A stretch of DNA of 63,029 bases, the filler included, from Octopus bimaculoides (taxonomy: Eukaryota), in the NCBI RefSeq assembly GCF_001194135.2. It is 6 parts of 5 records of this genome, joined end to end, with 100 filler letters (N's around TTAATTAATTAA, not from the genome) between each part and the next. Parts side by side here need not be neighbours in the genome. Positions count along the whole stretch, not along the records: positions 21,402 to 36,319 come from NC_068994.1; 5 more parts are not named here. The stretch is one strand, 5' to 3'. The position numbers and the translations under genes are program-made. Below, piece after piece: positions 24,213 to 24,262 of the stretch (position 1 is the stretch's first letter; each line of letters starts with the position of its first letter). The notes below the pieces were generated by a model. The model did no database searches, was not told where the DNA came from, and saw only the letters and a program-made list of their open reading frames with translations.

Positions 24213-24262
24213 GAGTCATATCACCGTTGATTTCAAATTTGATTAATCTTCATCAGTGACCC
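24213..24262 (-). ncRNA. Complete type I hammerhead ribozyme motif
   Basis: GGGUCA-CUGAUGA-AGAUU(AAUCA)AAUUU-GAA-AUCA(ACGG)UGAU-A-UGACUC: intact core, stems of 6, 5 and 4 bp, and an AUA cleavage triplet. Confidence 0.75.

What the first reader, a model, noticed from the sequence alone, without database searches (positions are those of the whole stretch)
24213..24262. Complete, monomer-competent type I hammerhead ribozyme on the minus strand
Seen in sequence (minus strand): GGGUCA-CUGAUGA-AGAUU[AAUCA]AAUUU-GAA-AUCA[ACGG]UGAU-A-UGACUC. All conserved core nucleotides are present (C3 U4 G5 A6 G8 A9, G12 A13 A14, A15.1-U16.1, H17=A). Stem I is 6 bp (one GU), stem II is 5 bp (one GU, A-U closing pair) and stem III is 4 bp. 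Established: this is the canonical hammerhead topology, AUA is an allowed NUH triplet, and type I hammerheads in animals occur in Penelope-like elements, retrozymes and a few domesticated intronic copies. Unlike the other motifs here, it has a real stem III, a different stem sequence, and no Penelope-like tail. It sits in a unique island of about 190 bp between (AT)n and (GT)n. Inference: this is either a copy of an unannotated cephalopod retrozyme-like family or a solitary self-cleaving RNA. Predicted cleavage is 3' of the A at window position 24219.
Basis: partly seen in the sequence, partly recalled or inferred. Interest (0 to 1): 0.88.

Follow-up and report, generated by a model that had tools for sequence, protein, structure and literature searches.

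The report
Weak solitary hammerhead-like motif in octopus
A 50-base stretch of an octopus-type genome scaffold spells out every conserved letter of a hammerhead self-cutting RNA and is too good to be a composition accident, but its helices are so weak and atypical that it is probably a feeble orphan copy or a look-alike, not an efficient ribozyme.

Summary
Minus strand 24262..24213 reads GGGUCA-CUGAUGA-AGAUU[AAUCA]AAUUU-GAA-AUCA[ACGG]UGAU-A-UGACUC. That is a type I hammerhead layout with a full core, helices of 6/5/4 bp and H17 at 24219. It lies in a single-copy 180-bp island between (AT)n and ATATAT(GT)n.

It is not a composition artefact. Chance expectation is about 3e-5 per piece or less, and shuffles of the 50-mer itself gave 0 of 300,000 equally good motifs.

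"Monomer-competent" is not supported:
- Helix II is all A-U/G-U and closes with A10.1-U11.1 instead of the conserved G10.1-C11.1. In phage contigs, 63 of 132 G-C-type core matches are complete hammerheads, against 0 of 116 A-U-type matches.
- The hammerhead fold (-3.9 kcal/mol) lies 6.6 kcal/mol above a competing hairpin that pairs the core CUG. In 52 natural type I hammerheads the ribozyme fold is the minimum-energy fold.
- No Rfam hammerhead model matches, even at E<=10.

Homologues, copy number and covariation could not be tested, because no cephalopod genome database was available.

Most likely reading (about 0.42): an orphan transposon-borne hammerhead copy inserted into a (TA)n tract, at most weakly active. 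A fortuitous look-alike is nearly as likely (about 0.36). Modest interest.

The parts
24213..24262 (-). Complete type I hammerhead-consensus motif, 50 nt
   Evidence: Sequence. Only descriptor hit in the piece, helices 6/5/4 bp.
24257..24262 (-). Helix I, 5' strand: GGGUCA
   Evidence: Pairs with UGACUC at 24213-24218, giving 6 bp with one G-U. Duplex energy -5.7 kcal/mol.
24250..24256 (-). Core box C3-A9: CUGAUGA
   Evidence: Read directly.
24235..24249 (-). Helix II with loop 2: AGAUU[AAUCA]AAUUU. It has A-U and G-U pairs only and closes with A10.1-U11.1.
   Evidence: Read directly. The isolated hairpin is +1.8 kcal/mol. The A-U closing pair was absent from all complete hammerheads in the phage control sample.
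24232..24234 (-). Core G12 A13 A14
   Evidence: Read directly.
24220..24231 (-). Helix III with loop 3: AUCA[ACGG]UGAU, with A15.1-U16.1
   Evidence: Read directly. The isolated hairpin is +0.2 kcal/mol.
24219..24219 (-). H17 = A. The predicted scissile bond lies between 24219 and 24218.
   Evidence: Descriptor output. Cleavage itself is inferred from the family rule and has not been shown.
24213..24218 (-). Helix I, 3' strand: UGACUC
24220..24260 (-). Competing hairpin. GUCACUG pairs with CGGUGAU and there are inner pairs. It sequesters core C3-G5, part of helix I and the 3' strand of helix III.
   Evidence: It is the minimum-energy fold at -10.5 kcal/mol. The mean pair probability of this helix is 0.97-0.99, against 0.003 or less for helix III.
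24083..24262 (-). Single-copy 180-bp island (43% GC) with the motif at its 5' edge. Possible insertion unit.
   Evidence: No other copy in the piece. GC content. Fold z-score +0.62. No match in a 21.7-kb Octopus sinensis locus.
24050..24082 (.). (AT)n tract bordering the island. It continues across the 163-N assembly gap to (TA)n at 23852-23886.
24263..24323 (.). ATATAT followed by an imperfect (GT)n/(GC)n tract bordering the other side of the island
   Evidence: The mir-297 and sno_ZL1 pseudo-hits are microsatellite artefacts.

Best explanation
The 50-nt motif is a genuine hammerhead-type sequence by descent. It is most likely an orphan ('solo') copy of a transposon-borne type I hammerhead of the Penelope-like-element or non-LTR-retrozyme kind. 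It sits at the 5' edge of a roughly 180-bp unit that was inserted into a (TA)n microsatellite in an octopod genome.

If transcribed from the minus strand, a small fraction of molecules could adopt the three-helix junction and cleave 3' of A24219 by the usual in-line 2'-O-transesterification. Most molecules would instead be trapped in a more stable hairpin that pairs the core CUG. Self-cleavage as a monomer is therefore expected to be slow or undetectable.

Shown here: the sequence, the topology, non-randomness with respect to composition, weak helices, the competing fold and the microsatellite flanks. Inferred: descent from a mobile-element hammerhead, the insertion event, transcription and any catalysis.
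For: - Complete core and 15 uninterrupted base pairs in type I order.
- Chance expectation of 4e-5 or less per piece by pair-count or energy criteria, and 0 equally good motifs in 450,000 shuffles of the motif or the island.
- No helix-forming look-alikes among 121 real partial-pattern matches.
- Helix I is exactly 6 bp and helix II is 4-5 bp. This matches canonical metazoan type I hammerheads (PMC4209133) and the 52 phage type I examples recovered here.
- The island splits an AT repeat: (AT)n on one side and ATATAT on the other. Penelope-like elements cut AT-rich or (TA)n targets (PMC8557442, PMC11167929), animal retrozymes are proposed to be their non-autonomous derivatives, and dispersed 'solo' monomers exist (bioRxiv 10.64898/2026.07.22.740005).
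- Island GC is 43%, within the low-GC range of metazoan retrozymes (PMC7229834).
- The host is an octopod whose scaffold is packed with retroelement debris.
- Evidence for weak activity: fold energies and pair probabilities, calibrated against natural hammerheads.
Against: - No homologue, second copy or tandem partner was found, so there is no covariation evidence at all.
- A10.1-U11.1 was seen in 0 of 116 phage core matches that could have formed hammerheads, against 63 of 132 for G-C.
- The hammerhead fold energy (-3.9 kcal/mol) is weaker than in all 52 natural type I calibrators. Its 6.6 kcal/mol gap to the minimum-energy fold is exceeded by only 2% of them.
- No Rfam hammerhead model matches at E<=10, whereas phage type I hammerheads score 18-27 bits in the same mode.
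- The island RNA is no more structured than shuffles.
- No Penelope-type RT/GIY-YIG ORF lies nearby. The neighbouring RT fragment is a generic RVT_1 type.
- A decayed copy would be expected to show stem mismatches or core hits rather than perfectly paired A-U-rich stems.
- If the scan covered a whole genome, a few chance motifs of this quality are expected.
Confidence: 0.42

Rival explanations
1. Fortuitous look-alike. The motif arose by chance in A/T-rich sequence full of TGA and TCA words next to microsatellites. It has never been a ribozyme and has no function.
For: - Every quantitative property that separates natural hammerheads from random hits places it outside the natural range. These are the A10.1-U11.1 pair (0/116 against 63/132), a fold energy weaker than all 52 calibrators, a 6.6 kcal/mol gap to the minimum-energy fold, and no Rfam hammerhead hit.
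- TGA occurs 5 times and TCA 3 times in the 50 nt. These words are reverse complements of each other, and they supply the core and two of the helices.
- It is single-copy with no homologues.
- Genome-wide, about 5-9 chance motifs of this pair count or energy are expected in 2.7 Gb. A scan of many windows that picks the best case could therefore surface one.
- The field itself warns that such searches are dominated by false positives (PMC6155905).
Against: - Expectation for this piece is only 4e-7 to 4e-5.
- There were 0 strict motifs in 60 Mb of random sequence and in 450,000 shuffles that kept the motif's own dinucleotides.
- Chance hits of equal energy were never compact, with none at 50 nt or less, and had larger gaps to their minimum-energy fold (median 10.3).
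- The position at the edge of an island that splits a (TA)n tract fits a mobile-element origin.
Confidence: 0.36
2. It is an efficient, monomer-active type I hammerhead, either a copy of an unannotated cephalopod retrozyme family or a solitary functional self-cleaving RNA. The competing hairpin acts, if at all, as an off-state, as in viroid and retrozyme RNAs.
For: - Complete core, allowed AUA triplet, a real 4-bp helix III and a 6-bp helix I.
- Strong non-randomness.
- Nearest-neighbour energies ignore the core's non-canonical pairs and any loop contacts.
- Natural hammerheads embedded in alternative folds are known (PMC4209133, PMC6155905).
- The assembly gap of 163 N inside the adjoining (TA)n could hide further sequence.
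Against: - Helices II and III are not stable on their own (+1.8 and +0.2 kcal/mol). The ribozyme fold has a probability of 1e-5 to 2e-7 at 37-15 C. The trap helix can form as soon as the 3' strand of helix III is transcribed, before the 3' strand of helix I exists.
- G10.1-C11.1 is missing.
- There is no tandem repeat.
- The island is not a compact structured RNA.
- No recognisable loop 1 closes helix I.
Confidence: 0.13
3. A small K-turn or C/D-box-like RNA. CUGAUGA would act as the C box and GUGA as a D-box variant, brought together by the GGGUCA/UGACUC terminal stem.
For: The only Rfam matches over the motif are C/D-box snoRNA models. These are snoU2_19 at 22 bits, then SNORD99, snoR77Y and SNORD33, and they align the UGAUGA box, the 3' UGA and the terminal stem.
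Against: - All scores are far below the gathering thresholds (22 against 39 bits; E 0.12-0.56 even in a 70-318-nt search).
- There is no CUGA D box anywhere in the island.
- At 50 nt it is too short for a eukaryotic C/D snoRNA with a guide and C'/D' boxes (established knowledge).
- The resemblance follows from the UGAUGA box that C boxes and hammerhead cores share.
Confidence: 0.02

Closest known systems
Canonical metazoan type I hammerheads (Schistosoma Sm-alpha, newt satellite 2, non-LTR retrozymes of corals, mussels and axolotl; Rfam Hammerhead_1 RF00163)
   Same: Type I connectivity, identical 11-nt conserved core, A15.1-U16.1, an NUH site, a 6-bp helix I, a 4-5-bp helix II, and a low-GC non-coding repeat-like context (PMC4209133, PMC7229834).
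   Different: - It closes helix II with A10.1-U11.1 rather than G10.1-C11.1.
- Helix II has no G-C pair.
- Helix III is 4 bp with a non-palindromic ACGG loop, rather than 1-2 bp with a palindromic loop.
- There is no recognisable loop 1 or conserved loop-loop contacts.
- It is not in a tandem array.
- The hammerhead fold is not the minimum-energy fold.
- There is no Rfam score.
Minimal hammerheads of Penelope-like elements (PLE min-HHR; Cervera and de la Pena 2014)
   Same: Type I core, occurrence in invertebrate genomes rich in retroelements, and association with AT-rich or microsatellite insertion sites (PMC4209133, PMC8557442, PMC11167929).
   Different: PLE motifs lack helix III or have 1 bp of it. 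They have a long helix II (6-8 bp) with an extra nucleotide after A9 and G10.1-C11.1, a short helix I, and they sit in pLTRs next to an RT/GIY-YIG ORF. None of this holds here.
Phage and bacterial type I hammerheads (recovered here from IMG/VR contigs)
   Same: Overall geometry: helices of about 6/4/5 bp with small loops and a real helix III that allows monomeric action.
   Different: All 63 complete examples have G10.1-C11.1 by construction of the search, and none was found with A-U. Their ribozyme fold is the minimum-energy fold (median gap 0) at a median of -16.7 kcal/mol. They get 18-27 bits from Rfam hammerhead models, where the octopus motif gets none.
Domesticated intronic hammerheads of amniotes (HH9, HH10)
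   Same: Solitary, non-tandem genomic type I hammerheads.
   Different: Those are ultraconserved across species, G-C-rich, have defined tertiary contacts and lie in known introns. No conservation or gene context could be shown here, and there is no Rfam HH9/HH10 match.

Membership tests
Hammerhead ribozyme, type I | Conserved core: C3 U4 G5 A6 N7 G8 A9, G12 A13 A14, A15.1-U16.1, H17 not G | tested here: met
   All present, with N7 = U and H17 = A at 24219.
Hammerhead ribozyme, type I | Three helices around the core in the order I(5')-core-II hairpin-GAA-III hairpin-H17-I(3') | tested here: met
   Helices of 6/5/4 contiguous pairs with no mismatches.
Hammerhead ribozyme, type I | G10.1-C11.1 pair closing helix II (highly conserved) | tested here: not met
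   A10.1-U11.1. Its conservation is stated in PMC4209133. In phage contigs, complete hammerheads make up 63/132 G-C-type core matches and 0/116 A-U-type matches.
Hammerhead ribozyme, type I | The ribozyme secondary structure is thermodynamically accessible, at or near the minimum free energy | tested here: not met
   The fold is -3.9 against -10.5 kcal/mol, with probability about 1e-5. Helices II and III are +1.8 and +0.2 kcal/mol alone. In 52 natural type I examples the median gap is 0, 92% are within 1 kcal/mol and 2% are at 6.6 or more. In the Schistosoma construct, recalled from memory, the ribozyme fold is the minimum-energy fold at -22.3.
Hammerhead ribozyme, type I | Tertiary contact between loop 2 and loop 1 or a bulge of helix I (needed for activity at physiological Mg2+) | tested here: inconclusive
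   Helix I ends after 6 bp and no closing distal stem was found. Loop 2 is AAUCA. No alignment is available to judge conservation.
Hammerhead ribozyme, type I | Match to curated covariance models (Rfam Hammerhead_1, Hammerhead_3, Hammerhead_II, HH9, HH10) | tested here: not met
   There is no hit at gathering score and none at E<=10 in 318-nt and 70-nt searches. As a caveat, 20 phage loci carrying descriptor-complete, experimentally unvalidated hammerhead motifs also gave no gathering-level hit. In E-value mode such motifs gave 18-27 bits.
Hammerhead ribozyme, type I | Homologues with an invariant core and compensatory changes in the helices | not testable with these tools
   No cephalopod genome collection is available. 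There was no copy in the piece or in 21.7 kb of O. sinensis. Metagenome, viral and prokaryote pattern scans found none. The translated search found none, but its control shows it was uninformative.
Hammerhead ribozyme, type I | Site-specific Mg2+-dependent self-cleavage that core mutations abolish | not testable with these tools
   This needs an experiment.
Metazoan non-LTR retrozyme | Head-to-tail tandem repeats of about 170-400 bp, each carrying a type I hammerhead | tested here: not met
   There is one 180-bp unit only, and no tandem or dispersed second copy in 14.9 kb. A 163-N gap lies 33 bp beyond the unit. 'Solo' monomers are described for vertebrate families (bioRxiv 10.64898/2026.07.22.740005).
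Metazoan non-LTR retrozyme | Multi-copy family in the genome | not testable with these tools
   No cephalopod genome search was possible.
Metazoan non-LTR retrozyme | Low GC (below about 45-50%) | tested here: met
   The island is 43% GC (PMC7229834).
Metazoan non-LTR retrozyme | Monomer RNA folds into a stable compact structure and accumulates as circRNA | tested here: not met
   The fold z-score of the 180-nt unit is +0.62, and 144 of 200 shuffles fold at least as well. circRNA expression is not testable here.
Penelope-like element minimal hammerhead | Helix III absent or 1-2 bp with a palindromic loop, long helix II with a bulged nucleotide after A9, and a short helix I | tested here: not met
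   Helix III is 4 bp with an ACGG loop, helix II is 5 bp without a bulge, and helix I is 6 bp.
Penelope-like element minimal hammerhead | Located in a pLTR next to an RT/GIY-YIG ORF | tested here: not met
   No ORF of 60 aa or more lies in the 540 bases between 24557 and 25097 (minus strand), and no ORF in the listing has a translation resembling GIY-YIG. The ORFs there were not scanned against Pfam. The nearest RT fragment (25197-25436) matches a generic RVT_1 protein of O. sinensis.
C/D-box snoRNA | C box RUGAUGA and D box CUGA joined by a terminal stem, 60 nt or more with a guide region, and score at or above the Rfam gathering threshold | tested here: not met
   The best match is snoU2_19 at 22 bits against 39. 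There is no CUGA in the island, and the motif is 50 nt long.

The most novel reading that the evidence does not exclude
The motif is the first recognised member of a cephalopod hammerhead family, either a retrozyme-like mobile element or a solitary regulatory ribozyme. It works with a non-canonical A10.1-U11.1 pair and an all-A/U helix II. Its activity is gated by a competing hairpin, for example by temperature, by a protein chaperone as reported for an anole Penelope-like element (PMC11167929), or by the heavy A-to-I editing typical of cephalopod RNA. The editing idea is pure speculation and was not tested.
Probability: 0.08. Interest if true: 0.55.

Novelty: new member of a known kind. Interest (0 to 1): 0.27.

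Why it matters
If it is real and active, it would extend the hammerhead/retrozyme repertoire to cephalopods. It would also show that the near-invariant G10.1-C11.1 pair and a G-C-containing helix II are dispensable in vivo, which would widen the descriptors used to hunt for ribozymes.

If it is inactive, it is a useful calibration case. A motif can satisfy every consensus position and be highly improbable under composition nulls, yet still fall outside the envelope of natural hammerheads on fold energy, on the gap to the competing fold and on the 10.1-11.1 pair.

Either way a single unvalidated copy has modest weight, because hammerhead motifs in animal repeats are already well known.

Tried and rejected
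1. Rfam at gathering score over the whole piece gave nothing. E-value mode on 318 nt and 70 nt gave no hammerhead model, only sub-threshold C/D snoRNA and microsatellite-driven miRNA pseudo-hits. The snoRNA reading was rejected because there is no D box, the motif is too short, and the score is 22 against 39 bits.
2. A second copy of the island was sought in the piece with blastn at word size 7. None was found. Repeat finder output was dominated by microsatellites.
3. A tRNA or SINE origin was checked with ARAGORN. It found none.
4. Exact-protein look-ups of ORFs next to the island gave nothing on record.
5. A six-frame peptide concatenate of the island was searched against 5.8 billion proteins, as a trick to reach non-coding repeats. 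There were no hits. A control with transposon fragments from the same piece returned only 4 proteins and no self-hits, so the negative result carries no weight.
6. DNA pattern scans of the metagenome, viral and prokaryote collections with a 23-base-specific pattern gave 0 hits. A looser 20-base pattern gave 121 metagenome matches, all without helices I and II.
7. A 21.7-kb Octopus sinensis locus was fetched through the RT homologue, in case the hammerhead belonged to that retroelement's tail. The retroelement and other repeats are shared at 77-86%, but the island is not. Linkage of the motif to that RT element was therefore rejected.
8. Pfam scans of neighbouring ORFs for Penelope-type RT or GIY-YIG domains found none.
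9. The fold of the whole island was tested for viroid- or retrozyme-like compactness. It is not different from shuffles on either strand.
10. The literature was searched for cephalopod hammerheads or retrozymes. Only Penelope-like-element surveys mention cephalopods.

Full report
**What is there.** On the minus strand, 24262..24213 reads GGGUCA CUGAUGA AGAUU-AAUCA-AAUUU GAA AUCA-ACGG-UGAU A UGACUC. A descriptor I wrote requires the core CUGANGA, a helix II hairpin, GAA, A15.1...U16.1, H17 and helix I closing the whole motif. It finds this as the only hit on either strand of the piece, with helices of 6, 5 and 4 contiguous pairs and H17 at 24219. The other five CUGANGA words in the piece have no compatible GAAA or helices. 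The order of elements is that of a type I hammerhead. The motif sits at the 5' edge (minus strand) of a 180-bp stretch of complex sequence, 24083-24262. That stretch is bordered by (AT)n (24050-24082, continuing across a 163-N gap to 23852-23886) and, on the other side, by ATATAT followed by an imperfect (GT)n. The island has no second copy in the 14.9-kb piece.

**Where it comes from.** The piece is a eukaryotic scaffold with five N gaps, dozens of microsatellites and transposon debris.
- A reverse-transcriptase tail at 25197-25436 (minus strand) is 65% identical to an Octopus sinensis protein (LOC115227337, RVT_1).
- A Tc1/mariner-like transposase pseudogene lies at 26198-26783.
- A 21.7-kb O. 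sinensis chromosomal locus fetched through that protein shares four interspersed repeats with the piece at 77-86% nucleotide identity.

An octopod origin is therefore supported. The island itself has no match in that locus.

**Is it chance?** Several nulls say no, as far as composition goes.
- Sixty megabases of Markov sequence trained on the piece gave 22 motifs at a lax 4/3/2-bp threshold, one at 5/4/3 and none at 6/5/4.
- Module-wise expectation for 6/5/4 is 9.8e-10 per base-strand. That is 2.6e-5 for the piece, 7e-5 for a 36-kb window and about 5 per 2.7-Gb genome. With loops as small as here it is 1.5e-11.
- Because the helices are A-U-rich, I also ranked chance motifs by fold energy. A hammerhead fold of -3.9 kcal/mol or better occurs at 1.65e-9 per base-strand (4.4e-5 per piece, about 9 per genome). 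None of those chance cases was as compact as 50 nt, and their median gap to the minimum-energy fold was 10.3 kcal/mol.
- Shuffling the 50-mer itself with its dinucleotides preserved is the most generous null. It gave one lax and no strict motif in 300,000 trials. The 180-nt island gave six lax and none strict in 150,000.
- As a real-sequence control, 121 metagenome sequences that share CUGAUGAA, UGAAAUCA and UGAU at the right spacing were examined. None had even 3 bp in both helix I and helix II.

The caveat is selection. If the first stage scanned a large part of a genome and reported the best case, a handful of chance motifs of this quality would exist.

**Does it look like a working hammerhead?** Here the evidence goes the other way.
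- *Helix II.* It consists of A-U, G-U, A-U, U-A and U-A pairs and closes with A10.1-U11.1. The G10.1-C11.1 pair is described as highly conserved in canonical and Penelope-type hammerheads (PMC4209133).
  - I tested this on data I could reach. In IMG/VR viral contigs, 132 matches to CUGAUGAG(8-24)CGAAAC included 63 complete three-helix hammerheads, 52 of them type I and typically 6/4/5 bp.
  - By contrast, 116 matches to the same pattern with A10.1/U11.1, CUGAUGAA(8-24)UGAAAC, included none.
  - This sample comes from phages and required C15.2, so it is an analogy and not a test on animal elements.
- *Thermodynamics.* The hammerhead secondary structure scores -3.9 kcal/mol, and the isolated helix II and III hairpins score +1.8 and +0.2.
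  - The minimum-energy fold (-10.5) pairs GUCACUG with CGGUGAU. That consumes most of helix I's 5' strand, core C3-G5 and helix III's 3' strand.
  - This competing helix has pair probability 0.97-0.99. The exact hammerhead fold has probability 1e-5 at 37 C and 2e-7 at 15 C.
  - The competing helix can form as soon as nucleotide 43 is made, before helix I's 3' strand exists.
  - In the 52 natural type I examples the hammerhead fold is the minimum-energy fold: the median gap is 0, 92% are within 1 kcal/mol and 2% are at 6.6 or more. Their energies have a median of -16.7 and a range of -25.3 to -4.6, so the octopus motif is weaker than all of them.
  - A cis version of the crystallised Schistosoma hammerhead, with the sequence recalled from memory, also has the ribozyme fold as its minimum at -22.3.
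- *Rfam.* There is no match at gathering score and no hammerhead model at E<=10, even when only 70 nt are searched.
  - A control tempers this. Twenty phage loci that contain descriptor-complete hammerheads also gave no gathering-level hit.
  - In E-value mode two of them scored 27 and 18 bits against Hammerhead_3, and one also scored 23 bits against RAGATH-1-hammerhead.
  - The Rfam negative is thus weak evidence, but the octopus motif does score below hammerheads that the models only half recognise.
- *Helix I and the island.* Helix I stops after 6 bp with no distal stem or recognisable loop 1. The 180-nt island is no more structured than shuffles (z = +0.62 and +0.81 on the two strands), unlike the compact RNAs of retrozymes.

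**Context.** The island interrupts an AT repeat, with (AT)n on one side and ATATAT on the other before the (GT)n begins. This is what an insertion into a (TA)n tract would leave.
- Penelope-like elements show a bias for microsatellite, (TA)n or AT-rich targets (PMC8557442, PMC11167929).
- Animal retrozymes are proposed to be their non-autonomous derivatives and also occur as dispersed solo monomers (bioRxiv 10.64898/2026.07.22.740005; PMC7229834).
- The unit size (180 bp) and GC content (43%) are in the retrozyme range.
- Against this, there is no tandem partner, no Penelope-type ORF nearby, and the motif does not resemble the minimal Penelope hammerhead.

**Weighing.** Chance is very unlikely for a randomly chosen 15-kb piece (about 1e-5). 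A functional hammerhead with this combination of atypical features is also rare among natural examples, at roughly the per-cent level or below on each of three partly correlated criteria. How many non-Penelope type I hammerheads an octopus genome holds is unknown. The two likelihoods are of the same order. The microsatellite-insertion signature and the uninterrupted 15 base pairs tip me slightly towards descent from a mobile-element hammerhead. My estimates are:
- An orphan transposon-borne hammerhead copy that is at most weakly active: 0.42.
- A fortuitous look-alike: 0.36.
- A K-turn or C/D-like small RNA: 0.02.

**What could not be done.** The decisive comparison is copy number, orthologues and covariation in cephalopod genomes. 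It was not possible with the collections available. The indirect attempts were negative or uninformative. No open paper in the library describes non-Penelope hammerheads or retrozymes in cephalopods.

**Verdict.** If genuine, it is a new member of a known kind. Interest is modest.

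Noticed in passing
window 28751-29153 and 22826-22946; L001 11834-12229: An interspersed repeat is present twice in the piece (core 22894-22955 against 29102-29163, 81% identity). 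It is shared with an Octopus sinensis chromosome at 80-84% identity, and is probably a SINE-like or other non-autonomous octopod repeat.
   Followed up: partly
window 35915-36225; L001 21038-21370: A second repeat family is shared with O. sinensis at 86% identity over 333 bp.
   Followed up: no
window 26198-26783 (minus strand): A Tc1/mariner-type transposase pseudogene. It is 62-74% identical to a 349-aa HTH_23-containing protein from a Logan assembly, with the alignment broken into two frames near 26404.
   Followed up: partly
window 25197-25436 (minus strand) and 22611-22868 (plus strand): Reverse-transcriptase fragments. The first is 65% identical to O. sinensis LOC115227337 (RVT_1) and 77% identical at DNA level to L001 10384-10645. 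The second looks like RT motifs by eye (HGFR..., DFSKAFD) but gave no Pfam hit.
   Followed up: partly
window 24263-24323 and 24359-24400: Rfam E-value-mode hits to mir-297, sno_ZL1, mir-3149 and others are artefacts of the (GT)n/(GC)n microsatellite. All are far below gathering scores.
   Followed up: yes
window 23887-24049 and the four other N runs (27677-27750, 29509-30390, 32103-32210, 34811-35265): Of the five assembly gaps, 23887-24049 sits inside the (TA)n tract next to the island, and three others (27677-27750, 32103-32210, 34811-35265) also abut microsatellites. No repeat was seen bordering 29509-30390. Sequence immediately beyond the island is therefore unknown.
   Followed up: no
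L149 586-632 and 911-960; L150, L126, L143, L233 and others (IMG/VR contigs): Many phage contigs carry complete type I hammerheads (6/4/5 bp), often several per contig. Rfam's gathering-score search does not report them: 0 hits in 20 loci, and 18-27 bits to Hammerhead_3 in E-value mode. Curated thresholds therefore miss this class.
   Followed up: partly
IMG/VR loci L240-L354: None of 116 core matches with A10.1/U11.1 (CUGAUGAA...UGAAAC) forms a complete hammerhead, against 63 of 132 with G10.1/C11.1. This is a simple natural-sample measure of how strongly that pair is selected.
   Followed up: yes
window 27751-27995: An imperfect (TGG)n tract and a 9/18-bp minisatellite. On the minus strand it reads as a long Thr/Pro-rich ORF (27544-28122) and is probably non-coding.
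   Followed up: no
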